Origin: Octopus bimaculoides
Lineage: Eukaryota
Length of the DNA: 38,363 nt
Assembly (NCBI RefSeq): GCF_001194135.2
Contig: NC_068981.1
Coordinates: forward strand, 59,229,228 to 59,267,590
Reading direction: 5' to 3'
Shown: in pieces, positions 1 to 35,941 of the stretch
Numbering within the stretch: position 1 is the first letter of the stretch
How the letters are laid out: each line of letters starts with the position of its first letter
Made by a program: the position numbers and the translations under genes
Notes under the pieces: model-generated
What the model was told of the DNA's origin: nothing
Databases searched by the model: none
Seen by the model: only the letters and a program-made list of their open reading frames with translations

Positions 1-25
1 ACGTTATAAAAATAAAACTACTGAA
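1..25 (+). mobile_element. Last ~25 bp of the 3' UTR of an R4/Dong-like LINE (UTR type i), running into its trinucleotide tail
   Basis: ACGTTATAAAAATAAAACTACTGAA is the exact reverse complement of 12494-12518, which is the 3' UTR end of the minus-strand element at 12467-12718. Confidence 0.85.
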
Positions 26-41
26 CAACAACAACAACAAC

Positions 42-104
<63 letters not shown>
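23..104 (+). repeat. (AAC)n(AAT)n compound microsatellite, the LINE 3' tail
   Basis: Directly visible; abuts the UTR end on the left and an RT fragment on the right. Confidence 0.95.
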
Positions 105-105
<1 letters not shown>

Positions 106-911
106 TCTGAGGTCATCCATGAATGACAAGTGGATGACTTTTTGTTGGCGGCTCGTGAATACATAGCTAGTCTTTGCTTTCCTCAGAATCAGTGTTAGTG
201 ATATCATGCATAGTACAAAGATCAGTGGGGACAGGTAGTCCCCTTTGAAGATGCCTCTCCCGATTTCTATTGTCCCTAAACTAATCCCATATACTGTCAC
301 TTCCGTCCTCTACTTCACCATACTCTTTCTAAGCAATCTCTCAACATTTCGATGCAATACCAAATAGGTTCATACATTCCATAATCCAAGAATGTGAGAT
401 CATATCGTATGCCTTTCGATAATCGATCCATGACATGAATAAGTTAGTTCTCATCCTCTTGTACAGTTTTGTACAGCCTTATTCACCAGGAATTGATCCT
501 TGCTACTTCTGTACTTACGCTTGCAACCCTTCTGCTCATGTGGCAGGACTCCATTTTTTAGATGTCCGTACATTGACTCTGTGACTATTCCAGTCAATAA
601 TTTCCACGTAAGTGGCAAGCAGGATATCGGCCTGTAATTGTTTACCGTATTGCCTTGTTCTATGCTTTTCAAGCAGAGCACTGTCCTACCCATTGTCAAC
701 CACTCTGGTGTTACATGGTTGGCATTTAGCAAGGTGTTGAGTTGTGCAGCTATTTGTGCATGACATTCACCAAATCTCTTGATCCAGTAGCCTTGAACTC
801 TATCTGGTCCCGGGGCCTTTCAGTTGCCCATTTTTTGCTGATTTCCTTCAGTTCCGTAATTGAAATGACTAGTTCTGCCGGTTTTGAACAGATTACTGTT
901 TGCTTGAGTTC
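105..911 (-). mobile_element. Decayed R4/Dong-clade reverse transcriptase, N-terminal half (inverted 5' segment)
   Basis: Minus-strand translation with frameshifts gives NYRPISCLPLTWKLLTG, EQKGCKRKYRSSKDQ, SWIDYRKAYDMISHSWI, GIFKGDYLSPLIFVL and HLSFMDDLR. Confidence 0.92.
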
Positions 912-1150
912 TTTATGATAAAGATGAATCCAAAGTCAGTTCCCTCGTTGATACAGTGTATACTTTCAGTGCTGATATCAGAATGGAGTTCAGACTGAAA
1001 AAGTGTGATGTGTTAGTCTTGAAGAGAGGCAAAATCAAATGTATGTACGGGCTGGCGATATCGTCGGGAGAGCTTATGAAGCAGAAAGAAGAGACGGGCT
1101 ATAAATACTTGAGGATACTGGAAATGGATAGATTGATGAAGAAAAAATGA
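911..1150 (+). mobile_element. Continuation of the same RT immediately after the FMDD motif, in the opposite orientation
   Basis: LYDKDESKVSSLVDTVYTFSADIRMEFRLKKCDVLVLKRGK...GYKYLRILEMD; highly similar to the collinear copy at 31115-31330. Confidence 0.9.
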
Positions 1151-1169
1151 CAGAAAAAAAATAACAATG

Positions 1170-1497
1170 ACGACGATGTCATTATTGTTATTATGTGATG
1201 AAAACTCACAGTTTATTTTGCTGGATATGATGGAAAGTGTCAGCTGTCCACAGCCAGCGGACTAAGGTGACTCTTGTTTACTAGTCATGCTTCAAGAACC
1301 CTACGAAGAATTCTTGCAGTTCCAAGCAATGCTGACGTTTTTTAAGTGTTCTACTTTCACAACTGCACCAAATTTTTTCAGACATGTTGGTAGTTGAGTG
1401 CTGATACTTCTAAGTGCACCAGTTACTATTGGTATCACGTCTACTCTCCTCATTGACCATAATCATCGTATTTTCCACTTCAAATCTTCATATGAAG
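1170..1497 (-). mobile_element. 3' end of an R4/Dong-like LINE: RLE C-terminus, short UTR type ii and degenerate AAT tail
   Basis: Minus strand reads YEDLKWKIR*LWSMRRVDVIPIVTGALRS...(frameshift)SALLGTARILRRVLEA*, then ~90 bp of UTR and an AAT-rich tail at 1170-1200. Confidence 0.85.
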
Positions 1498-4572: not shown

Positions 4573-4781
4573 GGCGAGAGATGGCAGAATCGTTAGCACG
4601 CCGGGCAACATGCTTAGCGGCATTTCGTCCGTCTTTTCGTTCTGGTTCAAATTCCGCCGAGGTCGACTTGGCCTTTTGGGGTCGATAAAACAATTACCTG
4701 TTGACTACCGGGGTTAATGTAATTGACTTAAACCCCTCCCCTAAACTTGCTAGTTTTCAGTCAAAAATTGAAATCAATATT
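4573..4781 (+). mobile_element. tRNA-derived SINE, family 1
   Basis: A-box-like TGGCAGAATCGTTAG and B-box-like GGTTCAAATTCC; homologous to copies at 13290, 20055, 27247 and 28020. Confidence 0.88.
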
Positions 4782-6211
4782 AATAGTGTGATAAGATTAA
4801 TCCAAAATATTTAACTTTTTCTTTTCCATTTGTTCTTAAATATGTGAATGGTTTCTGCATATTTTGTTTTGGCCTGTTTAGCTTTTTAGCTTTACTGTCA
4901 ATAGAACAGGATGATGTATAGCCAAATATTTTTTAAAAAATGACAGTATATATCGCTTGTGTTCTTCAACTCACCTCACTAATCTGTATGTATATAAAAG
5001 GCAGGATATGTATATACGTGTGTGTGTGTACGTGAATGTAATTTATGCACGTCCACAAATTAGCACGCATGTCGCTCCAATTTTAGGAGGACATTCGTCA
5101 TGACTCTAGCTGTATTTTCGTCAACTTATTTTTCCCAGAGGCACCAGCAAATAGCGGTAAAAATAAATTTTCAACCAAAACTTTTAACAATTTTCAAGTC
5201 GGAGAAATGTGTTAGTGTATTTTAGTATTTTTAATCCCTAATAACTTTTTATTTTAGGTAGATTTTCTTTTTCGATATTTTCGTTATTATTTTAGTAATT
5301 ATAATACGCTTCTACCTCTGGGTAATAGACGCCATATTTATCACGTGACCTTTCAGTATAAATTCTATAGTATACCCATTTTGGTCTAATCTACAGTAAC
5401 TCGCCGGCAGATAAATCATGTTCTCTAATTTTAATTTTCTAAACAATATTGACATACGTCTTTTATTAACTTTATACACTAACACATTTTTTTTACTATT
5501 TTTTACTATTATTTACTTCTTCCATAATGATTTAACCTTGTTCACTATAATACTCTTTTTCAATATTTTTAGATTGTAACTCTTAATAACTATATTAATA
5601 CCATTAACGTAGGGATTAGTTTACAGGTTTTGTCTCTTTATATAATTTTTTTTTCTCATGTTTATGTTTATTCCTTGAATGATTTTAGGTATTTTTTTTA
5701 GGAATTTGACCTGAAGTGTGACTGATTTTGGGAGTAAAATCATTTCCCCGTTCTAATGAACTTGGATAGAATTTGCTTATGACTTTATATAGTCCTATTT
5801 CAGCCATGAATCGCGCGTAGTCTATGTACTAGTACTGACGTTTATACATGTATACTTTCACACATTATATTATTGTATTAATTTTTACTGTCCTATTTAT
5901 AATTTATTTGAGTTTTAAATTAATATTTTTATGATGTATGTTTCTTTATATGATTAAAACTATTAAAATTTCAGATTAAAATATTAGATAAATATTGATA
6001 TGGTATATGCCTCACAGCCTAGTTTTGGATGGGTTCTTAGTTGACTGAGTTGTACAGTAGTGGTTCGTCTCTAAATTAGTTATATACATATATATTATAT
6101 ACTACGAAACCCGGTGTAATATTATACCGAATTTTGCCTGTAAGGTTGGAATAAGTTTTTATTCCCTAATATTATTACTATCTATTACTAATATTATTAC
6201 TAATTTTATTC

Positions 6212-9188: not shown

Positions 9189-9541
9189 TGTCTTTCCTTT
9201 TAAAGAACAATTACTGTGCGATTTGAGGACGTTTTGGATGCTATTTCTAGCATGACTCGGGAAAACTTATAGATACCGGAAACTGAGAATTTGTCGGAAA
9301 ATGTAGCTAAAGCTGATCACCGATTGATGGGTAGTTCTGAAGATAAATGGTTAAAACCATCTCGTCTATTGAACAGAGAAATGTTCAGGGTAAATAAATA
9401 TTTATCCAGTCTCAATTATAAATTCATTTGAAGACTGTCTTAACACACAACGTTTAGTCAGTCTACTTTTAGTAGTTTCAAACAATAATGATTAAGCAAC
9501 TTAAACATTAAATATCTGTGCTTCATATTTGACATTTCATA
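9189..9541 (+). repeat. Direct repeat, copy 1 (~350 bp)
   Basis: Aligns by eye with 10998-11297 (GTCTTTCCTTTTAAAGAACAA ... CTTCATATTTGACATTTCATA). Confidence 0.9.
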
Positions 9542-10387: not shown

Positions 10388-10997
10388 TGATGGTAACATT
10401 GATCAGCAAAGCAGTCTATCATAGACCTACAACCGGGTTACTACCTCCCACTTTGAAGGGTATGCGTTTGCAATTCAGGAAAGGAAATATCAACTAAGTA
10501 CCTGATACACAAATGGGGCAACAATGCAGGAAACGTAGTAAAATGTGACAACAGATGCAGACTTTGAAGAGTTAACACCGAAGGTGTTGCCCACATCGTA
10601 AGCAGTTGTCCGAAAATATCATCACAACATTATCTACCGATGAGAGATGGTGTAGCTACGGCACTATGTAATGAAATCCGTCTGAAAGGTAACCTCGAGG
10701 ACAAAGAAATAACTCATAGTATGGTAGAAGCCATAGCCACTCATAATAAAAAGGAGTACTGGTGAAATGTCTGAGTGAAAACTTAAATAAAATGTAAATA
10801 CAATAGAACTGATATAATGATCTGGAATAGAGAAGAAAAACTGTCTACAGTTGTGGAAATCAGCTGCCCAGTGGATGTTAACATAAAGCTGAAAATCAAT
10901 GAAAAAGAGAATACCTACGCTGAACTAGAGAAATTTGCACTGATTTTATCCAGATTATAAGCTCATATTTATACTTATAACTGGGACACTGGGATAA
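10388..10997 (+). mobile_element. R4/Dong-like LINE C-terminal fragment: CCHC knuckle and RLE nuclease
   Basis: TSHFEGYAFAIQE, CDNRCRL*...AHIVSSC (decayed CCHC), YNRTDIMIWNREEKLSTVVEISCP (PD-(D/E) core), ...ITGTLG; several stops and frameshifts. Confidence 0.85.
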
Positions 10998-11297
10998 GTC
11001 TTTCCTTTTAAAGAACAACTACTGTGCTATTTCTAGGACGACTCAGAGAATTTGCCGGAAAATGTAGGTAAGACTGATCACCGATTGATGGGTAGTTCTG
11101 AAGACAAAAGGTTAAAACCACCTCGTCTATTGAACACAGAAATGTTCAGAGTAAATAAATATTTATCCAGTCTCATTTATAAATTCATATTGAAGACCGT
11201 CTTAACACAACGTTTAGTCTACTTTTAGTAGTTTCAAGCAATAATGATTAAACAACTTAAACATTAAATATATGTGCTTCATATTTGACATTTCATA
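10998..11297 (+). repeat. Direct repeat, copy 2 (two internal deletions relative to copy 1)
   Basis: Homologous to 9189-9541. Confidence 0.9.
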
Positions 11298-11456
11298 GTT
11301 ACCCTGGTACCTGTACCACTTATCATGGGATTTAATTTTGTAGTATTCACAAGTATTCCAGTGGATGTACTGTCCTGGTCTGTCATGTCTTATGAGGTAC
11401 TCCTTTTCAGCGAGGACTGGGAAGCCAGAAACACCAGGATCAATTGTCTCTGTGAA

Positions 11457-12466: not shown

Positions 12467-12467
<1 letters not shown>
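11457..12467 (+). mobile_element. Helentron-type non-autonomous element (HINE/DINE-1-like architecture)
   Basis: 5' TTATTACATCCGCC with a hairpin TCCGCCTT-agcg-AAGGTGGA (11471-11490) and a GTTT/GTCC tract; 3' TTGGAGGAGG sub-terminal repeat (12437-12446), stem-loop GCACT-atatg-AGTGC (12450-12464) and T-rich end. Class assignment rests on recalled architecture. Confidence 0.62.
12019..12190 (+). mobile_element. Gypsy/Ty3 integrase C-terminal (GPY/F module) fragment
   Basis: FVRNDVAKPPLTAPYAGPFRFLSRTDKFFTIDLNGRKDTISVDRLK matches the typical Gypsy P-Y-x-G-P-F ... SIDRLKP pattern. Confidence 0.85.
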
Positions 12468-12498
<31 letters not shown>

Positions 12499-12718
12499 TA
12501 GTTTTATTTTTATAACGTGCTTTCACTTCACTACCGAGCGCAGCTCTGTGCGCCTTGGGTATGTGCTGTGGTTTGCTGTGGTGCTCTTATGTTTACTGTA
12601 TTGAAAGTGTTTTGCGTAGAATGTGTGCAGTACCCAGTAGTGCAATTTTCTGTATGTTATATATATTTGTAAGTCCTGCTATTTTTGTTATGTATTTGTC
12701 TGAATATTTTTTTATTAT
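12467..12718 (-). mobile_element. 3' end of an R4/Dong-like LINE (UTR type i) with (AAT)n tail; 5' side lost in the gap
   Basis: Minus strand reads KKYSDKYITKIAGLTNIYNIQKIALLGTAHILRKTLSIQ*, then ~100 bp of UTR and the tail at 12467-12495. Confidence 0.9.
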
Positions 12719-13187
12719 ANNNNNNNNNNNNNNNNNNNNNNNNNNNNNNNNNNNNNNNNNNNNNNNNNNNNNNNNNNNNNNNNNNNNNNNNNNNNNNNNN
12801 NNNNNNNNNNNNNNNNNNNNNNNNNNNNNNNNNNNNNNNNNNNNNNNNNNNNNNNNNNNNNNNNNNNNNNNNNNNNNNNNNNNNNNNNNNNNNNNNNNNN
12901 NNNNNNNNNNNNNNNNNNNNNNNNNNNNNNNNNNNNNNNNNNNNNNNNNNNNNNNNNNNNNNNNNNNNNNNNNNNNNNNNNNNNNNNNNNNNNNNNNNNN
13001 NNNNNNNNNNNNNNNNNNNNNNNNNNNNNNNNNNNNNNNNNNNNNNNNNNNNNNNNNNNNNNNNNNNNNNNNNNNNNNNNNNNNNNNNNNNNNNNNNNNN
13101 NNNNNNNNNNNNNNNNNNNNNNNNNNNNNNNNNNNNNNNNNNNNNNNNNNNNNNNNNNNNNNNNNNNNNNNNNNNNNNNNNNNNNNN

Positions 13188-13235
13188 CTTCTTCTTCTTC
13201 TTCTTCTTCTTCTTCTTCTTCTTCTTCTTCTTCTT

Positions 13236-13266
<31 letters not shown>

Positions 13267-13286
13267 TTATTATTATTATTATTATT
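13188..13286. repeat. (CTT)n(TAT)n microsatellite following a 468-N gap (12720-13187)
   Basis: Directly visible. Confidence 0.95.
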
Positions 13287-13289
13287 TCT

Positions 13290-13420
13290 AAATTCCGCCG
13301 GAGTCAACGTTGTCTTTCATCCGTTCGGGTCGATAAATTAAGTAACAGTCAAGTACTGGGGTCAACGTGATCGACTATCCCCCTCCTGCAAAATTTCAAG
13401 CATTGTGCCTGTAGAAGAAA
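13290..13420 (+). mobile_element. 5'-truncated SINE, family 1
   Basis: AAATTCCGCC...TTTCATCCGTTCGGGTCGATAAATTAAGTA...CTGGGGTC matches the bodies of the copies at 4573 and 27247. Confidence 0.8.
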
Positions 13421-16146
13421 GGATTGTTATTGTTATAATAATTTGGTTGCATTGCAGAATTTTGTTGAGATAATGGACATGCAAGTGTATCTTAAAAGCT
13501 TTCTATCATCTGTCTGTTCAGAGAGTTGAAATCATCCAACAGATATATTAAATATACTTTCTATACCATTTCGAGTGAAAAGCTCAAATTATATCGTTGC
13601 CACCAAATAGAACGTAGAGAGGGCATTCTTTATGTTAGTGAATAGAGATATTAACAACGGTTCCGAGTTTTGAGTAATTTTGCGTTGTTAGTTATACTAA
13701 CCACATGTTTGTAATCTGTACTTTAAAAATACAACTCAAATATAATAATTGTTATAAAATAAATCCCAACGCACAAAAATAAGAGCAAAATTGGTGCTGT
13801 GTTTAGAAAGGCAACGCTTAACTAACTAATAATAATGTGGCGTAGAGAACAAAAATTTATCTCAGTGACTAACGTTGTCATTACTTCCTTTAAAATATAT
13901 CCTTCTTGATCTTTAGAACGTTACAGATACGAGAATGACTATAGTGAAGTACAATTATTTAAGCATGTAGGCGTCAAAAAGTACTATTGTGACTAAGGGT
14001 TACCTATGTAGATGTCGTAGCATCTTCAGTCACAATTGTTCGAAATTAGAGAACGGGGAAACCGTCGTTTATAGGAAACACACAAGTAGTAACTGGCTTT
14101 GTCATTCTTTGAAATCCATGAAGACCCGAACTCAGAACATAATTTGGAGTATCTGAACACTGTAGGACAGTTAAACCTACTCTCAATCAATTTCACCACT
14201 CTACGATAGTGCATCGGCTTGCAATAAGATATAAAGCCAAAACCAATTGTATTCTTTTATAAAGAGAATATCTGATGGGGAGTATAAAAGGAATCAGTGG
14301 AGAGAAGAAGAAACGAAAACTTTGTTGACAATAACACTACCCTATACATCAGCCTCCTGCACTGAAGAGAAAAAACCCCACCAACAGAGTATGAATAGAT
14401 AAGAAATGGAAATCATGACACCTGTTTGTATTAGTCTTGTTCTGCTACTGAATTTGGATTTATTTGTACTCAAGTTATTCGAACATTCTTCCCACTTATT
14501 CTCTCCCAGCCTTCTTCAGGGAAGATGAAGTTAGTGCAGTAAAGAAAACTCGATCTTTTAGTCAGAATATGAATATATTTCAAGTAAAATGTATCAACCG
14601 TCATTATAAGAAAATAATTTGGTTAGAAACAAATGTCAACTAGTTAGAACGTGAAAATAAAAAAAGAAATGAAGAAGTGCGAAATGATCTGTGTCTACAA
14701 AACTGAAATCGATTGAACTTATTTAAATACATGACTGGGTCACGTATTAATCTAGCACAAGATTTTAATGATTTACCTGAATTGATACACTATAGAATTT
14801 TATTAATCTTCAGACAAAGAAAGTTGAAAACATCCATAGCAAGATTAGGACTCAGGAAAATAAAGAATCGCTGGGTATTTAATCTCATGTACAACTATTT
14901 CAGATACTGTAAATGTCTCAAGAATGAATAACAACGCAACTCTAGAATGCATTTACTCGTAACTATTTTCTAACCTTTATTAGAAAGTGTCCATCAGTAA
15001 CACCTGTAGAGCTGTTAACAAAGCTGCAAAACGCACAACTTTAAGTTTAAGTACTATACCTATGTGAGATAATTTAAAACAAAAAGAATTATTGGTGATT
15101 TTCATAAAGAATTACTTAAAGAATTACTTAAGTCCTACTTATCTGAGTACACGGCACGATCTCGATTCTTAGTCAATTCAGTTTCACTTCACTTTTAACG
15201 TCCTTTTGAAAGTTATGTACAACACGAATTAACTTTCTACTTCTCTGCATATCATTCACATGAATATTTGAACAATGCTGCAATATTTCTTGACGAAGTA
15301 TTAACGCTTTGCCTTTCCCTCTTGAAATTTTCTCATTAATATAAATCACTTCGAACATGAAATAAAGATATTAGTTTTGTTTCAGATCACTTGAATTTGT
15401 TTCTCCAGGAAATATTTTAAAGGTAATGCTTATTTTATTGCTGCTGTAATGTAGTAACAGAATACTAAAGTAGATATTTGTAAGAATAAAATATTTTCAT
15501 TAAATAAATTTATTATTATTACTTTCTCATGATGGTCAAGTAGCTGAAACAGTAGAGGGGCTGTCTTACAGAGCATATCGTCGACTCCTTGAGTTCAGAT
15601 TCACCGAAAATCAACAACGCTATTTATTTTCTTATAACTTAAGACGTTAGTACTATGAATGTACTAAGGTCGATTCAACACGTTATATATATTCGTCCAT
15701 TAAAAATATTTCGTCTTGATTTAATATAAGAAAGCAATTTTACATTCGTCACATCGTGGGAGTCTGTATTTGTCCGACATCGCCACGGCACAATGCCTAA
15801 AATGAACTAAAGGTCATACTTGGTAATAATACTGTTTTTTTTTTATATATATAAGTAACCCGCCGTTCATAGAATATAAAAAAAAGTTAGTACCGATGTA
15901 AACGTGTTGTAAATCTAGTACCGTTTCTATTTTTCTCGTATTAATATTTGCGACAGTTTTTTCGCAGAAGGTGCGATTTAAAAGGTTAAATTTCTTTCAA
16001 CTTTTTTATTGGGAATATTTACATTAACTCTACACACTTAATGATTATTATATTTTCCACCGTTTTTCCAACGTGCTTTACATTTACAACATCATATATC
16101 TGTTAGTCCCTCATACAATTTTAGGGTTCTTATTTTGCTAGTGTTT

Positions 16147-19956: not shown

Positions 19957-20054
19957 CTTCATGGAAATGAAAGGTGAATTTGTTCATGAGATGAAGAATT
20001 ACAACTGCTTTCTGATGTAGATTTATCGTTGATATTACCACTTGTTCTTGGTGG

Positions 20055-20215
20055 CATTTCATCCGTCCTAACGTTCTGAGAACAAATTCCGCTGAGGTCG
20101 ACTTTCATCATTTTGGAGTCGATAAAATAAGTACTAGTTGAACACCGGGGTTGATGTAATCGATTTACTCTTCCCTCAGAATTGCTGGCTTTGTGCCAAA
20201 ATGTGAAACCGATAT
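20055..20215 (+). mobile_element. 5'-truncated SINE, family 1
   Basis: GTTCTGAGAACAAATTCCGCTGAGGTCGACTTT...GTCGATAAAATAAGTAC...GCTGGCTTTGTGCCAAAATGTGAAACC. Confidence 0.82.
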
Positions 20216-20589
20216 TACTACTTATTGAAATAATTTTAATTATTCTGCCACTACAGTGTCCGCTGCGTTTCGGAGCTAGTTGGCTTCATTCAAACCCATC
20301 AGTTAATTAGTCTTTTCTTCTTTCCTTCTTCCATATTGTATCCACCAGATTTTGCCCTAAAAACTACTCCAATCCTTTCTTCTTAGAATGTTGGCTCTCT
20401 GGAACTCCTTCGACGTAGAAGTTTCTTTTTCTGTAGACGTCAACTCGTCACTATTCAAAAGAAAAGCTCAATGTGTCGGTCTCACCAATCTTAGCAGGAC
20501 TGTGAAAGTCGAAGGCACAGCCTCTTCTTCCAGGCCAGATTAGTTAAAACATGGGTTTTCTACAAGCGGTTGCAATTGCGATGCGTTAC

Positions 20590-23800: not shown

Positions 23801-24494
23801 ATGAGGAGAACTAAGAAAAAAGTAATAAATTATGATGAAGGATTTGCAGTTCTCCCATCAATGCCCTGCACTTCCTTTTCAGCAATCCAAATTGCTGGTA
23901 AGTACACTATTGTAATTTTAACTACATATCACGATATACAAATACTTTACGCTGCATGCATGTATGTATATATATTTTATACATATACTTATGTATATGT
24001 ATACATAAGGTGGATTTGAGTATATGCGCACACATTTTTATTAAATTTCTCTTTGCATTCTGATAATTTTTATAAGTTCAAATGATTTTATCTGGCTTAA
24101 TTTCTATTGATTTTATTTCTCAAGTATCTGAAGGTTTTATTTTATTTATTTATAAATCTCTAGATGTTTTTCCATTTCTGAGATGACCTTTCAATTTAAC
24201 CTCATGCATACAGCACGTGATTATTGGTCATGTTACAGCCAATAGCAACATTCAAGGTGTAGTATCTTGTGCCTGATAATATCAAAAACATTATGGGTCA
24301 TGTTTTATTTCTTTACTGAAATAATTTGGTTTTGCAAATGTAAAAAGTAACAAGACTGCTTTCGCACGAATGGACACAACTTTTTGAGTGGACTGCTTTG
24401 TAATTGACAAAATGAATTAGATCGCATCGGTTTGCCCACAATCTCATATCCTTTCATCTGCTGTCGCTGCCGCCATTTCTTCTTGTCCTTGTTG

Positions 24495-24625
24495 TAGCTG
24501 TTGTTGTTGTTCTTGCTGTTCTTGTTGTTGTTGTTGTTGTTGTTCTTGTTGTTGTTGTTGTTGTTGTTGTTGTTCTTCTTCTTCTTCTTCTTCTTCTTCT
24601 TCTTCTTCTTCTTCTTCTTCTTCTC
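24495..24625. repeat. (TTG)n(TTC)n compound microsatellite
   Basis: Directly visible. Confidence 0.95.
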
Positions 24626-27243: not shown

Positions 27244-27468
27244 AGGGCGGCAAGCTAGCAGAATCGTTGGGCACGATGGGCGAAATGATTTGCGGAATTT
27301 CGTCTGCCGTTACGTTCTGAGTTCAAATTCCGCCGAAGTCGACTTTGTCTTTCATCCTTTCGGGGTCGATTAAATAAGTACCAGTTACGTACTGAGGGCG
27401 ATGTGATCGACTTAATCCTTGTTTGTTCCCTCTATGTTTAGCCCCCTGTGGGAAATAAAGTAATATGT
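27244..27468 (+). mobile_element. Full-length SINE, family 1, with a 20-bp target-site duplication (27224-27243 and 27843-27862)
   Basis: A box TAGCAGAATCGTTGG, B box GAGTTCAAATTCC; the 20-mer ATATATTTAGAACGCCAAAT is identical at both sites. Confidence 0.9.
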
Positions 27469-28019: not shown

Positions 28020-28210
28020 TTGGTGAGCCGACAGAATCGTTAGCACGCCGGGCAAAATACTTGACAGCATTTTGTCTGTTTTTACGTTTTGAGTTCAAAT
28101 TTCATTCTTTAGAGGTCGATGAAATAATTACCAGTTGAAAACTGAGGTGGATGTGGTCGACTTACTCCTCACCCGAAATTGCTGGCCTTGCGCTAAAATT
28201 TGAAATCAGC
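28020..28210 (+). mobile_element. SINE, family 1, with an internal deletion and a ~15-bp TSD
   Basis: GACAGAATCGTTAGCACGCCGGG ... GAGTTCAAATT; flanks ATTTCTCATCGTACA and ATTTCTCATCATACA. Confidence 0.85.
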
Positions 28211-30639: not shown

Positions 30640-31590
30640 AATGTAACATACTGTTACATTTCCTCCTATGACTAGAGTTCATACCATTGATGATTATTGT
30701 AGTTTCATAATGTTTGAGTGTGTCTTCCGTTATGCCTTTCTATCATAGCGAGTCTATCATATAGACAGTACTGCAGAACTAGAGATGAGGCTAGATTATT
30801 ACCAAAGTGATCGCAGAACCTGCAGTTCAGATGTACACCAATTTTTTAATATATTCATCTCGATAGTTTCTGATAAAGAAACTCAAGTCTTGTGCTGCTG
30901 ATATAATCCACCAGTCTCTGCTTTTAGCCCAGAAATTTTCAGTCACTGATGGATTATTCTCTGATTTCCATCAAAATCTTTGTTTCAGAGTCCTTACTGT
31001 CCGCATAGATTTTTTTTTTAGCCTTGCTTTTATGCTATGTACTTGGTGCTATGTGCTAACTGTCAGAGTTTTCCTATTGACCTATTGAAAATATCCGGCA
31101 CTTTTGTGGTAAATGTATCCATTTCCAAAATCCCCAAGTACTTATAGCCCGTCTCTTCTATCTGCTTCATAACCTCCCCCGACGGTATCGTCAGTCTGTC
31201 CATACATTTGTTTTTCCCCTCTTCAATACCAACACACCACACTTTCTCAGTCCGAACGTCATTGTGATATCAGCACTGAAGGTATACATCGTATCAACGA
31301 GGGAACTGACTTGGGCTTTATCTTTACCATGAATAACAAATGGTCGACTTTTTGTTGGCGGCTTTTGAATACATGCCAAGCTTTTGCTTTCCTCAGAATC
31401 AGTGTTAGTGGTATCAAGCACAGTACAAAGATAAGTGGGGACAGGTAGTCCCCTTGGAAGATGCCCCTCCTAATTTCTACTGTCCCTAAACTTTTTCCTT
31501 ATGCTGTCAGGTCCGTCCTTCAATTCGCCATACTTTTTCCAAGCAATCGCTCAACATTCGATGCAATCTCAAACAGGTTCATACACTCCA
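30640..31590 (-). mobile_element. 5'-truncated, internally deleted R4/Dong-like LINE (RT core plus C-terminal knuckle region)
   Basis: RRGIFQGDYLSPLIFVLC, KAQVSSLVDTMYTFS...GYKYLGILEMD, then IHQ*LKISGLKAETGGL/ISAAQD...CRFC and QWYE; near-identical in places to 105-372 and 911-1130. Confidence 0.88.

Positions 31591-31672
<82 letters not shown>
31591..31672. repeat. (TAT)n, the (AAT)n tail of the element at 31673-32990
   Basis: Directly visible. Confidence 0.95.
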
Positions 31673-32990
31673 GAGTGAGAGAGCAAGGCATGCCATCACA
31701 ATGACACTGGGGTAAAATATACGAAGCCCAATATACCCATCATGACTATAAGTCTGATAAGGGTACACCGGACACATGCATCACAACCAAATGTGCGTGA
31801 CATGGCGATCTCATATCAAGATAAACAGTGCATGACCTCGCAGGTGGGGCCCAGTTAAGATTTTCTTCAGGTCGAATAGCCCATCCTGTTCAAATGATCC
31901 TTGAATAAGGATTGTTTAAGAATGTTGAACGAAACACCTATATTTCCAGAGATGAATTATTCCATCTCCAAAGGAATCCTCTCAACACATGATGGTCCCT
32001 TACTACTTCTGCACGTGATCAGACATGCACATATCATCATCCACCAAAGGAATGCTCAACTGGTTAAGGTCAAACACCTGACAAGAAAATATGTTTTATT
32101 GAGCATATTTGCTGTAGCCCATCTTTTATACCAAAACAAAACATGTACACGATAACACTTTCAATCAGTTAAGATCAGAATCCATGAGAGCCATTGCCTG
32201 GTACTACTCAGAGCGCTCGGTCTTGTTTTCTCTGGTTGATTATGTGAGAGCGGAGAGCAGCCTGTTGTCAGAGGTCTCACAGGGTCTCTTTCTGCATATT
32301 ATAAGCTTTGATACTTGGTAGTTAATTATCGTGGGAGGCATTCAACATCCAAGTACTATCTCAAAATTCTAGCTGTCCCCAGCGGAGCACAGTTTTGGGC
32401 TTGCTCTACTCTCATGTCAATTCCAATTTCTTTGAGGTATTTCTCGAACTTGGTTGTTAGTGTTCCGAGTGCTCCTACGACTACTGGAATGCCGGACACT
32501 CTCATCATAGTTCACACTCTTGCTATTTTGTTTTTTATAGTCTGTACTTTTCAATCTTTTCTAGTCCTTTGTCACTTATGCGTGCATCCCCAGATATTGC
32601 AATATCTATAATCTTGGTTTTCTTTCCCCCTTTATATATCATCATATCTCCATTGATCATACATACGTTGTCGGTATCCCCTAATATGAACACTATTTTC
32701 GTCTACAGGGTTTCTCAGGTAGTAACACTCCATGACCACAGCATTAATTTGTTTGTTCCATCTACACCGTGCGTGCTGGTCCCTTGCTAGATAACGACAG
32801 GCTGGAGCCTACCGGGTGCAACACTGTCACCATCAAGAGCTTTAGTTTCATTACCACCGTTACTTATAATATTTTGTTTTTTCATTGTTACTCGTATGAG
32901 GTAGCGTTTATCAGGTTGCGCAATTACCAGTGTTTTTATCGTGACACCATCATTAGATGTATCATCAATCAGGACATGGGGAGATTCCAA
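31673..32990 (-). mobile_element. Internally deleted (RT-less) R4/Dong derivative: N-terminal ORF region fused to RLE, followed by a ~660-bp UTR (type iii)
   Basis: RCRWNKQINAVVMECYYLRNPVDENSVHIRGYRQRMYDQW joins at ~32650 to DMMIYKGGKKTKIIDIAISGDARISDKGLEKIEKY...IPVVVGALG...LGTARILR. The 5' boundary is approximate. Confidence 0.8.
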
Positions 32991-33179
32991 CCGCTTCCTT
33001 TTATTATCATTATTATCGTCACTGATATTATTATTTTCATTGCTTTTACTATTTGTCATTGTTAATATTTCCTTTGATCCGACATTAGTTTTGGCGAAAT
33101 TATTAGTATTATTATTGTTTTTTTTCTTGTTTCTTCAAATTTTCTCCCATTTCTCGCCGAGTGTTTTCCGTACACCTAG

Positions 33180-33640
33180 GGCAGAGAAGCTCATTGTATG
33201 CATTCCCAGTTTACACACGCAAATTCACAGGTAAAATATGTATTTTCCAGAAAGCTATATACTTCATCTTCTTTGGGGTCAGTTAAAAGTTTTCAGAGTT
33301 CAGGTAAAACAGTATAGGTCTACAATTGCTGACTTCCCCTTTCATTTCTTTGTCCTTTCGCATCAACTGCCTCCTTCGTCACCCATGTTGGTGTTCCATT
33401 TTCTTTGCAGTCAGAATACCTGTCGTATATAACTGTATATACTTGGAATATTTTTGAGTGAGAAAACCTGGATACCATCTTGTGCAGAGTATTTCCAATT
33501 TGGTATTCTTTGATTATCGCTTTTTCATTCTTATCTATGATTGCTATATTTTCTTTTATATTTTCTTGTGTTATTCTATCTTCCGTTTCTCTTTTAAATT
33601 CCCGGAACAAGTCTACTGTTATATTATGTTGGACTTCTGT
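33180..33640 (-). mobile_element. Older, heavily decayed R4/Dong RT N-terminal fragment
   Basis: Across frameshifts: RIPNWKYSAQDGIQVFSLKN, ENGTPTWVTK, KDKEMKGEVSNCRPI, EVYSFLEN. Confidence 0.55.
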
Positions 33641-34520
33641 TCCCCTCTCTTGACTAACATTACACATTTATATATGCCTAATTCCATGCCTATATCTTTG
33701 TCGAAAAGTCTTACAATCTGTATTAAGGAATCTATCTCTTTTTCATTCTTACTAAAAAGCTTCAGCTCATTCATGTAGAGAAAAATGGTTAATTTCTCCC
33801 TTACTATTTCTGAACTGATACCCTGCCTTTGTCTTCTGTAATACTAAACTGAAGGGGATCAAAATAAGACAAATATTAAAGGGGACAACGAGTTCACCTG
33901 GAATATTCCTCTTTTGATATTAACTTTCCCTAAGAGTGTGTCACCTGAATAGAGATCTACGTTCTATTTTTTCATGCTAAAGCTAATTAATTCTCTTATG
34001 TTTTTTGCTATACTGAATATACTCAAACATTTACTTATCCATGAGTTTGGGATCATGTCATAGGCTTACTTATAATTTATCCATGCTATTGTTACATTTT
34101 TCTTTCTAGCTGTTACTTCATTTAAAACTGTTTTTGTCTATATATAATAGATCATGCCTTTCACTAACCTTCTTCCTGCAACCTATCTGCTCTTCTGGTA
34201 TTAAATTCTGGTTGTCAAGGTGCCCGTAAATGCATTCTGAAAGCATTCCTGTTAAAAGCTTCCATACTGATGGTAAGCAAGTGATTGGTCTATAGTTGCT
34301 AGCTGTATTACTCATGCTCTTATCCTTCATAATAAGTATTGTTTTCCCTCTAGTCATCCAATCTGGTATTGTTCCTCCATTAAGGCAATCGTGAAGTTCT
34401 TCCCTCAGCCTCCCATGTAAACTACCGAATTTCTTTAGCCAGTACACTTGAACTAAATCTGGTCCTGGACCCTTCCAATTCGGCATTTTTCTTAACACTT
34501 TACTCATTAACGCACCAGTT
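33640..34520 (-). mobile_element. 5'-truncated R4/Dong RT fragment
   Basis: MPNWKGPGPDLVQVYWLKKF...NYRPITCLPSVWKLLTG...IPEEQIGC, AWINYK*AYDMIPNSWI, RGIFQVNSLSPL, LYMNELKLFSKNEKEIDSL...KCVMLVKRG. Confidence 0.9.
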
Positions 34521-34522
34521 GT

Positions 34523-34593
<71 letters not shown>

Positions 34594-34610
34594 TTAATAT
34601 TATTATTATT
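34523..34610. repeat. (TAC)n(TAT)n, the tail of the element at 34611-34975
   Basis: Directly visible. Confidence 0.95.
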
Positions 34611-34975
34611 GAGTGAGAGAGCAGTGCATATCAAAGTGACAGTGAAGTAAAATATACGAAGGCCAGTATACCATTCATGACTACAAATCTGATAAGGTTA
34701 TACCAGGCACATGCATCACAACCATGTGTGCGTGACATGGTGATCTCATATGACCTTGCAGGTGGGCTCCAGTTAGAATTTGCACATATTGTCAGCCACT
34801 AGAGTACATGCTCAACTGGTTAAGGTCAAGCGACTGATAAGCAAGTTTGTGGTATTGAGCAGTATATTTGCTGTAGCCCATCTTTTGTACCCAGACAAAA
34901 CAACATACATGATAAAACTTTCAATCAGTTAAGATCAGAAGCCATGAGAGCCAGTGTCTGGTACTGCATCAGAAC
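34611..34975 (-). mobile_element. Second copy of UTR type iii (5'-truncated, with internal deletions), bounded by (CAT)n at 34977-35015
   Basis: Homologous to 31673-32210 (GAGTGAGAGAGC...AATATACGAAG...CAACTGGTTAAGGTCAA...CAGTTAAGATCAGAA). Confidence 0.88.
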
Positions 34976-34978
34976 ATG

Positions 34979-35014
<36 letters not shown>

Positions 35015-35941
35015 TTAATAATATTATATTGTTATTTTATTAATATCATTGTCATTGGTGTTCTTGATGTTGATGTTGTCATCATCATCAATATTGTTTT
35101 AGTATCATCTATTATTCTGTAAAATTATTTTCTTTTAATTTTTAGTTTGCTTTAATGCTAAATTCAGAAATTTTAACTCTAGTTCAAACTTTAATCCGTA
35201 ACCCATTTATTGGTTTAAATTTTAAAACTCGTGTAATGAAGTTAATTTGAATTTACATTTGACTTTCAACAACTTTAACTTGACCTCATCTCATTTCAAC
35301 CTAACATCTCTCAATCTATCTCCATTTTATGTTCTAGCTAATTAGAGCTTTCTTATCCTGTACATCACAATATGATTACTACTGATATTTCTTCATCTTC
35401 TAATATAATTCCCTTGCTATGTTTGATAGCAACGATCACCAAATATTAAAGTCTTAGGTTGTCCATGTGTATAAATGGCCCATATCAAATTTTCACACAA
35501 CACCGATAAACAATGCCAGTATGGCAATTTGTGCTGACCTGACTACAAACACTAATGTTTTTTAATTGTTACTTTCCCAAATTTAGGTCATCCAATACCC
35601 CTGCTTCTATTCAGTGACTCCTTCCTCTATCATTTCCTTACTCCTCTTCACATCTTTGTAACCTGTCTTCCGCTTTTCTCTATGCTACTTGCATCTTTCC
35701 AGTTTTTCCTTCCTTCTCCCATGCACTCACTATTACATCAATGTTCTGCTTTGTTATAATCAGAAATGGCTCTGATGTAAGTAGCATTAATTTTTTTAGG
35801 TCGTTCAATTTTCTCAACTGACCAATAAACCAAATAGAGTTAACCTACCAGTAGTGTACCTATAATGACTACTGGAAACAATTGTAAGTCAAATTTGCTC
35901 CAATGAAGGAAAAATATGTTATGACCATTATTCTTAACTTG

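What the first reader, a model, noticed from the sequence alone, without database searches (positions are those of the whole stretch)
30640..35015. Self-renewing target: same-strand stack of R4/Dong retrotransposons joined through their own trinucleotide tails
Seen: five RLE-LINE pieces lie on the minus strand over 4.3 kb. In element order they are (ATG)n, UTR iii, (AAT)(AGT)n, RT fragment, older RT fragment, degenerate AAT (32995-33125), RT-less element, (AAT)n, RT/knuckle fragment. Twice a UTR iii tail runs straight into the 5'-truncated start of another element, and the same pattern opens the window (1-105). Established: Dong-lineage members of the R4 clade target TAA microsatellites. Inference: each insertion deposits a fresh (AAT)n target, so several lineages pile up serially, producing both LINE stacks and microsatellites.
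Basis: partly seen in the sequence, partly recalled or inferred. Interest (0 to 1): 0.8.

Follow-up and report, generated by a model that had tools for sequence, protein, structure and literature searches.

The report
Stacked Dong-like LINEs in AAT microsatellite
This is a pile of broken copies of a known kind of jumping gene (a Dong-like LINE that inserts only into TAA/AAT microsatellites). The copies landed one behind another in the same orientation, which is real and instructive but is what this family's known target preference predicts.

Summary
On the minus strand of 35014-30640 lie, in order:
- (ATG)12
- a 368-bp 3'UTR-only copy
- (AAT)6(AGT)23
- an RT fragment
- a weak RT-like fragment
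- a decayed AAT tract
- an internally deleted copy (5'UTR, first 23 codons, RLE end, 683-bp 3'UTR)
- a pure (AAT)27
- an RT-plus-zinc-knuckle fragment

Two tails run with no gap into a 5'-truncated copy. A third such junction, from another UTR family and on the plus strand, opens the window; its downstream copy carries a twin-priming-like 5' inversion.

A near-full-length relative is flanked by (AAT)n on both sides. Its C-terminal domain matches only the knuckle and RLE region of R2 structures. Contigs from five other assemblies show the same same-strand stacks separated by (AAT)n. Their members are only 64-68% identical, so they are independent insertions and not duplications.

(TAA)n targeting by Dong is published, and Dong-R4 is a known active LINE group in octopus. 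The "self-renewing target" idea is consistent with the data but unproven. Three pieces are 3'-truncated, which the model does not explain. R4 versus HERO placement could not be tested.

Verdict: new member of a known kind, modest interest.

The parts
34979..35014 (-). (ATG)12 tract at the 5' junction of piece B. Upstream of it (35015-35092) lies a decayed A-rich trinucleotide tract.
   Evidence: TRF. The decayed tract has 17 of 25 triplets within one change of ATA. GAT/ATG is one substitution from AAT.
34611..34978 (-). Piece B: a copy 5'-truncated within the 3'UTR, ending CTCTCTCACTC.
   Evidence: Aligns with the 3'UTR of F at about 83% identity, apart from a 157-bp indel.
34523..34610 (-). 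Tail and tract (AAT)4 ATT AAT (AGT)23 joining B to C.
   Evidence: The AAT units are proximal to the UTR and the AGT run abuts C.
33625..34522 (-). Piece C: RT fragment (RT residues 1-278 of L001), truncated at both ends, with stops and frameshifts.
   Evidence: Pfam RVT_1 at 1e-14. R2 and L1 ORF2 are the best PDB hits. tblastn identity is 48-58%.
33130..33624 (-). Piece D: a weak fragment resembling the RT N-terminal region. Its lineage is uncertain.
   Evidence: tblastn E=0.015. BLASTP gives 30% over 53 aa, E=3e-4. No nucleotide match to the copy at 106-1138, so it is not part of H.
32996..33125 (-). Tract E: a decayed AAT microsatellite at the 5' side of F.
   Evidence: 27 of 43 triplets are within one change of AAT and 14 are exact. 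About 1% of random windows reach this.
31673..32995 (-). Piece F: an internally deleted copy. It comprises the 5'UTR (32995-32734), ORF codons 1-23 (32733-32647), the RLE C-terminus (32645-32356) and a 683-bp 3'UTR (32355-31673).
   Evidence: tblastn to the L001 N- and C-terminal ORFs. The 5'UTR block GGTGTC.CGATAAAAA.ACTGGT is shared with L001. RLE motifs IIDIAISGD...EKIEKY...VVGALG align in A2.
31591..31672 (-). Pure (AAT)27 joining the tail of F to the 5'-truncated start of H.
   Evidence: TRF shows 100% matches. Homology of H to the copy at 117-383 starts at 31592.
30640..31590 (-). Piece H: RT residues 151-319 plus the CCHC knuckle, 5'-truncated and cut just before the RLE.
   Evidence: RVT_1 at 1e-4, tblastn, knuckle CRFCDH...C in frame translation. 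85% nucleotide identity to 117-383 and 908-1134.
1..104 (+). End of another Dong-like 3'UTR (1-23) followed by its tail (AAC)6(AAT)21.
   Evidence: Bases 1-23 match the UTR end at 12518-12496. The blastn match continues into the repeat: 1-52 versus 12518-12467, 88%.
106..1138 (+). Dong-like copy of the H subfamily with a 5' inversion. RT residues 1-242 are antisense (831 to 106, extending to about 905) and residues 243-319 are sense (911-1138).
   Evidence: tblastn and ORFs. The breakpoints are contiguous in the element (FMDDLR then LYDKDESK).
12467..12658 (-). 3' end of a further minus-strand Dong-like copy: ORF end (LLGTAHILRK...), about 100 nt of UTR, and an AAT tail of about 10 units (TRF 9.7 copies).
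   Evidence: Its body lies in the N gap 12721-13187.
13188..13286 (-). (AAT)7(AAG)26, the 5'-flanking tract of the copy hidden by the gap.

Best explanation
The region is an old (TAA)n/(AAT)n microsatellite locus that was hit repeatedly by several lineages of a (TAA)n-specific LINE of the Dong type. These elements carry an RT, a zinc knuckle and a restriction-like endonuclease (RLE).

Inferred mechanism, by analogy with R2 and Dong:
1. The element's protein recognises the repeat and nicks one particular strand.
2. The (UAA)n 3' end of its RNA pairs with the nicked repeat, and target-primed reverse transcription (TPRT) copies the RNA. Copying often stops early, which gives 5'-truncated copies.
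3. The target is asymmetric, so every insertion into a given tract has the same orientation.
4. Every new copy is again bordered by (AAT)n: its own tail plus what remains of the tract.
5. Later insertions therefore land directly behind or in front of earlier ones. This gives head-to-tail stacks in which a 3'UTR and tail run into the truncated start of the next copy.

The tracts later mutate and expand into one-step derivatives of AAT (AGT, AAC, AAG, GAT). Ordinary deletions then removed the 3' parts of C and H and the interior of F. D is only weakly RT-like, and how it came to lie in the stack is unexplained.

Shown here: the anatomy, the RT and RLE identity, the (AAT)n flanks on both sides, the orientation lock, and the independent lineages. 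Inferred: the cleavage and priming steps, and that tails replenish the target.
For: - RT identity of C and H.
- A profile of the C-terminal domain hits only R2 proteins in the PDB, in their knuckle and RLE region (E=1.5e-6; alignment with invariant PD...D...K...Y columns).
- Relative L001 is nearly full length and is flanked by (AAT)n on both sides. The same holds for L003, L006 and L007.
- Zero-gap junctions between a tract and a 5'-truncated copy occur at 34522/34523 and 31590/31591. The same occurs in L004 (12712/12726 and 14995/14994), L006 (9993/9998) and L008.
- All 10 additional Dong-like copies in the 20-kb related loci share the strand of the index copy (P about 0.001).
- Stack members are different lineages (64-68% identity), while L004a is 96.7% identical to a copy in another locus.
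- Every (AAT)n tract of 5 or more units in the window abuts a Dong-like end.
- Boundary-to-tract adjacency has P about 8e-9.
- Literature: Dong targets (TAA)n in insects, molluscs and cnidarians (PMC7998251; PMC3812793). Dong-R4 has 5 recently active families and 1129 insertions in Octopus vulgaris (PMC13282606).
Against: - C, D and H lack their 3' ends, and D has no tract at its 5' side. TPRT always preserves 3' ends, so extra deletions must be assumed.
- The tracts at two junctions are (AGT)23 and (ATG)12, not AAT.
- No empty site or polymorphism was seen, so the order of insertions is unknown. Whether the tracts come from tails or from slippage is also unknown.
- The window is from a gapped assembly.
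- RT phylogeny against Dong, R4 and HERO references was not possible.
- No 5' ribozyme was detected.
- The supporting stacks come from other, unidentified genomes.
Confidence: 0.75

Rival explanations
1. Individual junctions where a tail meets a 5' end were made in a single integration event. The reverse transcriptase would have jumped from the end of one RNA template onto the (UAA)n tail of a second RNA, giving a two-element concatemer at once.
For: Template jumping is a known property of the related R2 reverse transcriptase (my own knowledge, not tested here). The junctions are seamless. The 5'-inverted copy at 106-1138 shows that irregular priming does occur in this family.
Against: Neighbouring pieces belong to different lineages and are decayed to different degrees (C versus H; L004 members 64-68% identical). 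Stacks of four or more members with long tracts between them are hard to make in one event.
Confidence: 0.1
2. The stack is an assembly chimera. Contigs that all end in (AAT)n-type repeats were joined wrongly through the microsatellites.
For: The window contains an N gap (12721-13187) directly beside a microsatellite, inside another Dong-like copy. So the assembler had trouble at exactly this kind of site. Every junction in question is a low-complexity tract.
Against: The stack contains no N. The tracts are 36-88 bp. The same architecture, with longer tracts (up to 59 units), occurs in Mb-scale contigs from five other assemblies.
Confidence: 0.08
3. The array arose by tandem duplication or unequal crossing-over between (AAT)n tracts, not by separate insertions.
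For: B and F share a UTR at about 83% identity in the same orientation. Microsatellites promote unequal exchange.
Against: There is no periodic unit. The pieces cover different, overlapping parts of the element and belong to different lineages. In related stacks the members are 64-68% identical, while one of them has a 96.7% twin elsewhere.
Confidence: 0.03
4. The pieces accumulated passively in a TE-rich region, and their shared orientation and nearness to microsatellites are coincidence.
For: The window is TE-rich and microsatellite-rich throughout.
Against: Boundary-to-tract adjacency has P about 8e-9, and 10 of 10 neighbours share orientation in related loci. Full-length relatives are precisely flanked by (AAT)n.
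Confidence: 0.02

Closest known systems
Dong (Bombyx mori) and its relatives DongAg and DongBg (Biomphalaria glabrata), R4 clade
   Same: Single-ORF LINE with an RT followed by a zinc knuckle and RLE, no N-terminal zinc fingers, and insertion into (TAA)n with the repeat on both sides (PMC7998251, PMC3812793).
   Different: Membership by RT phylogeny was not tested. The window's copies have a much longer 3'UTR (683 bp against about 65-110 nt in the related loci). No HDV-like 5' ribozyme was detected, although one is reported for Dong (PMC3774820).
Dong-R4 families annotated in octopus genomes
   Same: Abundant and recently active in Octopus vulgaris: 5 families, 1129 near-full-length insertions, about 4.2 kb each (PMC13282606). 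Shared across coleoids (PMC8967140). An element of about 3.6 kb, as in L001, given the long UTR seen here would be about 4.2 kb.
   Different: The source species of the window was not verified. Searches of those papers for microsatellite, simple-repeat and tandem terms found no description of microsatellite junctions or stacks.
R2 (28S rDNA-specific RLE LINE)
   Same: R2 proteins are the only solved structures that match the C-terminal knuckle and RLE domain, and R2 is the best RT match in the PDB. The mechanism proposed here is modelled on R2.
   Different: R2 targets 28S rDNA and has N-terminal zinc-finger and Myb domains. Here the target is (TAA)n and no zinc-finger or Myb domain was detected.
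HERO clade (RLE LINEs, some families microsatellite-specific)
   Same: RLE architecture. Some HERO families are reported to target microsatellites (PMC4640811). HERO is present in octopus at low copy number (PMC13282606).
   Different: Cannot be separated from R4 here without reference sequences. It is far rarer than Dong-R4 in the octopus annotation (13 against 1129 recent insertions).
Other repeat-specific LINEs that form same-orientation arrays: TRAS/SART in telomeric repeats, and Utopia inserted in tandem in U2 genes
   Same: Strand-specific insertion into a tandem repeat leaves target on both sides, so copies line up head to tail (Utopia: PMC4640811; TRAS/SART from my own knowledge).
   Different: Different clades and different targets. 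In those cases the target is renewed by telomerase or by gene arrays, not by the element's own tail.
Birth of microsatellites from LINE and SINE 3' tails (Alu and L1 poly(A); RTE in Lepidoptera)
   Same: Tails seed microsatellites that mutate to new motifs and expand (PMC3812793, PMC2887409). Here AAT sits next to its one-step derivatives AGT, AAC, AAG and GAT.
   Different: In those cases the tail is not also the element's specific target.

Membership tests
RLE-bearing non-LTR retrotransposons (R2, R4, NeSL, CRE, HERO) | Reverse transcriptase of the non-LTR type | tested here: met
   Pfam RVT_1: C at 1e-14, H at 1e-4, L001 at 4e-27. The best PDB hits are R2 and L1 ORF2.
RLE-bearing non-LTR retrotransposons (R2, R4, NeSL, CRE, HERO) | CCHC knuckle and PD-(D/E)XK restriction-like endonuclease on the C-terminal side of the RT | tested here: met
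   Profile A2 hits only R2 proteins, in the knuckle and RLE region (E=1.5e-6). The motif columns (the D of RPD, the D of IID, and K..Y) are invariant. In the window, F keeps the second half of the RLE and H keeps the knuckle.
RLE-bearing non-LTR retrotransposons (R2, R4, NeSL, CRE, HERO) | No AP-endonuclease domain upstream of the RT | tested here: met
   The 319-aa N-terminal ORF of L001 gives no Exo_endo_phos hit. This cannot be tested on the truncated window copies.
R4 clade, Dong lineage | Insertion into (TAA)n microsatellites, with the repeat on both flanks | tested here: met
   L001, L003, L006 and L007 are flanked on both sides. The window copy at 13286-12467 has (AAT)7(AAG)26 at its 5' side and (AAT)10 at its 3' side. 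Every AAT tract in the window abuts a copy end.
R4 clade, Dong lineage | N-terminus without zinc fingers, with only a highly diverged Myb/SANT-like domain (PMC7998251) | tested here: inconclusive
   Pfam finds no zinc-finger or Myb domain. A conserved N-terminal block M.C....P..RGYRKRM...W...G.F..SEQRL.DQA..I..N.W is present. The HHpred-type comparison that revealed the Myb-like domain could not be run.
R4 clade, Dong lineage | RT phylogeny grouping with Dong, R4 and Rex6 rather than HERO, R2, NeSL or CRE | not testable with these tools
   No reference sequences of these clades were available. Homologues found are unnamed ENA ORF fragments.
R4 clade, Dong lineage | HDV-like self-cleaving ribozyme at the exact 5' end (reported for Dong and R4, PMC3774820; not a strict definition) | tested here: inconclusive
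   Rfam gave no hit at gathering threshold or at E up to 10 on the L001 5' end. A hand fold of the L001 5' end did not give canonical P1.1 and L3. All window copies lack the first 75 nt or more.
R2 | Specific insertion in 28S rDNA, with N-terminal zinc-finger and Myb domains | tested here: not met
   Flanks are (AAT)n, not rDNA (no rRNA hit). No zinc-finger or Myb hit.
HERO | RT phylogeny; mostly non-specific insertion | not testable with these tools
   The observed target specificity argues against a typical HERO element, but some HERO families target microsatellites (PMC4640811).

The most novel reading that the evidence does not exclude
Dong-like LINEs and (AAT)n microsatellites form a positive feedback loop. 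Each insertion adds a fresh, pure (AAT)n tract of fixed polarity, and that tract recruits further insertions. One ancestral tract would then grow into tens of kilobases of same-orientation LINE arrays. The family would also be a major source of AAT-type and derived trinucleotide microsatellites in cephalopods and other invertebrates. The evidence is compatible with this reading: inter-element tracts stay about 170-230 bp long in a four-member stack, the summed tract length is about 0.9 kb in L004, and AAT units sit next to the UTR ahead of a different motif at 34610-34523. The evidence does not separate this reading from subdivision of a tract followed by slippage.
Probability: 0.35. Interest if true: 0.5.

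Novelty: new member of a known kind. Interest (0 to 1): 0.3.

Why it matters
The locus is a clear worked example of how a repeat-specific LINE shapes its surroundings. It shows orientation-locked stacks, 5' truncations placed exactly at tract edges, an internally deleted copy, and a 5'-inverted copy.

If the feedback between tails and target were shown genome-wide, it would help explain two things: why Dong-R4 is so successful in octopus, and why AAT-type compound microsatellites are common there.

There is also a practical point. These stacks are places where assemblies break (see the N gap at 12721-13187) and where repeat annotation will fragment elements.

Tried and rejected
- Rfam scans of the window and of two related loci at gathering threshold, and of the L001 5' end at E up to 10, gave no ribozyme or other RNA family. 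A hand fold of the L001 5' end as an HDV-like ribozyme failed on P1.1 and L3.
- A single-sequence search of the C-terminal domain against the PDB found nothing. Only the profile built from related copies worked.
- Pfam on the conserved N-terminal block gave nothing meaningful. The DUF4895 and L_protein_N hits are sub-threshold.
- I asked whether D and H are one copy split by F. I rejected this because H matches the copy at 106-1138 at 85% while D does not match it at all.
- I asked whether C and H are one split copy. I rejected this because they overlap over RT residues 151-278.
- I first took the SINE-like sequence next to (AAT)7(AAG)26 at 13290-13376 for an AAT-tailed SINE. The tRNA-like head shows that the SINE is plus-sense, so the tract lies at its truncated 5' side. 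The tract belongs to the gap-hidden Dong-like copy.
- The original Dong paper and the mosquito R4 paper are not held in the library.
- The protein search returned only unnamed ENA fragments, so it gave no clade names.
- The species of the window and of the ENA assemblies was not identified.

Full report
**What is in the sequence.** I read the minus strand from 35014 to 30640.

- It starts with (ATG)12.
- Piece B follows at 34978-34611. It is 368 bp, ends in CTCTCTCACTC, and runs into (AAT)4 ATT AAT (AGT)23.
- Directly after the last AGT, with no spacer, piece C begins. It is an open-reading-frame remnant reading ...TTGALMSKVLRKMPNWKGPGPD... Pfam calls it a reverse transcriptase (RVT_1, 1e-14). 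Its best solved relatives are R2 and L1 ORF2.
- C stops at about 33625, in the middle of the RT. Piece D follows and is only weakly RT-like.
- A decayed AAT tract lies at 33125-32995. It has 27 of 43 triplets within one change of AAT, and about 1% of random windows reach that.
- Piece F comes next. It has a 5'UTR and the first 23 codons of the element's ORF (MECYYL...). These are fused at 32646 to the last 100 codons (KIIDIAISGD...EKIEKY...VVGALG...LGTARILR). A 683-bp 3'UTR follows and again ends in CTCTCTCACTC.
- F's UTR is the same sequence as piece B, at about 83% identity apart from a 157-bp indel.
- A perfectly pure (AAT)27 follows.
- At the very next base piece H begins. It covers RT residues 151-319 and a CCHC knuckle, and it breaks off near 30640 just before the endonuclease motifs.

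The only weak item is D.

**More copies in the window.**

- Bases 1-23 match the end of the 3'UTR of another minus-strand copy, at 12518-12496. The blastn match (1-52 versus 12518-12467, 88%) continues into the repeat.
- The window therefore opens in the last bases of a plus-strand copy of a second UTR family, followed by (AAC)6(AAT)21.
- The next element, at 106-1138, belongs to the subfamily of H (85% identity) and is rearranged. RT residues 1-242 run antisense from 831 to 106, and residues 243-319 run sense from 911 to 1138. The two breakpoints are contiguous in the element. This is the layout expected from twin priming. So the claim that the same pattern opens the window holds, with that twist, and on the other strand.
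- The copy at 12658-12467 has (AAT)10 as its tail and (AAT)7(AAG)26 on its 5' side. Its body is hidden by an assembly gap at 12721-13187.
- Every AAT tract of five or more units in the window touches the end of such a copy.
- Four of six 5' boundaries lie within 12 bp of a trinucleotide tract edge, against 0.5% expected per boundary (P about 8e-9).

**What the element is.**

- A protein search with C returned only unnamed ORF fragments from ENA assemblies. Their contigs could be read.
- Locus L001 holds a nearly intact relative of about 3.6 kb. It has a 337-nt 5'UTR, then three ORF segments that together make one protein: a 319-aa N-terminal part, a 368-aa RT, and a 307-aa C-terminal part. About 65 nt of 3'UTR follow.
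- L001 is flanked by (AAT)n on both sides...(AAT)14|ATATCCCCGAG... at the 5' end and ...GTTAGCTC|(AAT)20 at the 3' end.
- A profile of the C-terminal part from nine copies, including F, matches only R2 retrotransposon proteins among all PDB sequences. The match covers their zinc-knuckle and restriction-like endonuclease region (E=1.5e-6).
- The N-terminal part has no AP endonuclease, no zinc finger and no Pfam domain. It does have a conserved block near the start.

This combination is what the literature describes for the R4/Dong group. That group is RT plus REL-endonuclease, with no recognisable N-terminal motif apart from a remote Myb-like domain. [quoted passage not shown]

Dong-R4 is also the most abundant recently active LINE superfamily annotated in Octopus vulgaris, with 1129 insertions averaging about 4.2 kb (PMC13282606).

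I could not run the RT phylogeny that defines the clade. HERO, some of whose families also target microsatellites (PMC4640811), is not formally excluded. No HDV-like ribozyme of the kind reported at the 5' end of Dong (PMC3774820) was found by Rfam. That search is insensitive, and all the window's copies lack their first bases in any case.

**Is the stack a general property?** I fetched eight loci from five ENA assemblies. I mapped Dong-like segments and trinucleotide tracts on them.

- L004 carries four copies on one strand, separated by (AAT)n. Twice a tail runs straight into a 5'-truncated RT, at 12712/12726 and at 14995/14994.
- L006 has a 5'-truncated copy starting 4 bp after a tract. Its 47-unit tail leads to a full-length copy.
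- L008 has a chain of short 3' fragments, each followed by its own tail.
- All ten additional Dong-like copies share the strand of the index copy (P about 0.001).
- The members of a stack are only 64-68% identical to each other. One of them is 96.7% identical to a copy at another locus.

The stacks are therefore independent insertions of different lineages and not duplications. This also argues against the idea that the window's stack is merely a mis-assembly. These contigs are megabase-sized and carry longer tracts.

**How it most likely works.** The shown facts are strand-specific insertion into (TAA)n, tracts on both sides of every complete copy, 5' truncations exactly at tract edges, and orientation-locked neighbours.

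By analogy with R2 and Dong, I infer four steps:

1. The RLE nicks one strand of the repeat.
2. The (UAA)n end of the RNA pairs with it and primes reverse transcription.
3. Each new copy is again bordered by target of the same polarity.
4. Later copies therefore line up behind earlier ones.

The 3' junctions are mostly ...C|AATAAT. A hairpin spanning the stop codon is conserved with compensatory changes in the relatives (11 of 16 pairs), and F has a stem at the same place. This hairpin is a candidate protein-binding site in the RNA.

The tracts then evolve. All partner motifs seen (AGT, AAC, AAG, GAT/ATG) are one substitution from AAT, both in the window and in L003 and L007. This matches the published route by which retrotransposon tails give rise to new microsatellites (PMC3812793).

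**What is not explained or not proven.**

- C, D and H have lost their 3' parts and F its interior. TPRT does not do that, so later deletions must be assumed.
- The claim that each insertion deposits a fresh target fits several facts. AAT units lie between B's UTR and the (AGT) run. A pure (AAT)20 lies next to L001's UTR, followed by decayed triplets. Tracts stay 170-230 bp long at every junction of a four-member stack. However, splitting of a tract followed by slippage would look the same.
- Template jumping could produce single junctions in one event.
- The order and dates of the insertions are unknown.
- The source species was not verified.

**Comparison and verdict.** In kind this is a known system: a (TAA)n-specific RLE LINE of the Dong type, in a genome group where Dong-R4 is known to be abundant. 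Head-to-tail arrays are the expected outcome for any LINE that inserts strand-specifically into a tandem repeat, as with Utopia inserted in tandem in U2 genes (PMC4640811).

The searches I could run in the held library found no explicit description of Dong stacks joined through their tails, nor of a tail-to-target feedback.

I rate it as a new member of a known kind, with interest 0.3.

Noticed in passing
window 106-1138: One Dong-like copy has a 5' inversion whose breakpoints are contiguous in the element (RT residues 1-242 antisense, 243-319 sense). It abuts (AAC)6(AAT)21. This is the twin-priming layout known from L1, seen here in an RLE LINE.
   Followed up: partly
window 1150-1492 (minus strand): Another Dong-like 3' end (...ALLGTARILRRVLEA*, a UTR, and a short decayed AAT tail) lies tail-to-tail against the 3'-truncated end of the copy at 106-1138. 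A short inverted repeat lies at about 1160-1195. An opposite-orientation junction of this kind is not expected from the target model.
   Followed up: no
window 12721-13187: A run of 467 N (assembly gap) lies directly beside (AAG)26 and hides the body of a minus-strand Dong-like copy. Assemblies break at exactly these LINE and microsatellite junctions.
   Followed up: partly
window 4584-4785, 20047-20220, 27258-27419, 28032-28208, 13290-13376: A tRNA-derived SINE family (plus-sense, with a B-box-like GAGTTCAAATTCC) has four copies plus one 5'-truncated copy. The truncated copy abuts the (AAG)26(AAT)7 tract.
   Followed up: partly
window 10541-10927 (+) and 11283-11450 (-); also 9285-9541 / 11046-11297: Two more distant fragments resembling a knuckle plus RLE (25-37% identity to the L001 C-terminal domain) lie in opposite orientations. 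A 92%-identical direct repeat brackets them. They may belong to another RLE LINE family.
   Followed up: no
L001 8122-8217 and nine other related 3' ends; window 32355-32312: A hairpin spanning the ORF stop codon and the start of the 3'UTR is conserved. Of 16 predicted pairs, 11 show compensatory changes across 10 copies. F in the window has TACTTGG...CCAAGTA at the same position. It is a candidate recognition element for the reverse transcriptase.
   Followed up: partly
window 24-104, 13188-13286, 24489-24624, 34523-34610, 34979-35014; L003 12110-12238; L007 8672-9135: Compound trinucleotide microsatellites are built from AAT and motifs one substitution away from it (AAC, AAG, AGT, GAT). The (AAG)17(AAC)n tract at 24489-24624 has no recognisable LINE next to it.
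   Followed up: partly
window 32646: F joins ORF codon 23 directly to codon 208 of the C-terminal segment (a deletion of about 2.8 kb) while keeping both UTRs and the tail. It could be a one-off deletion or a member of a non-autonomous family.
   Followed up: no
L004 4583-7200 versus L006 12870-16493: Two copies at different loci of the same ENA assembly are 96.7% identical over 2.6 kb. That genome therefore holds a recently active Dong-like family that inserts into pre-existing stacks.
   Followed up: partly
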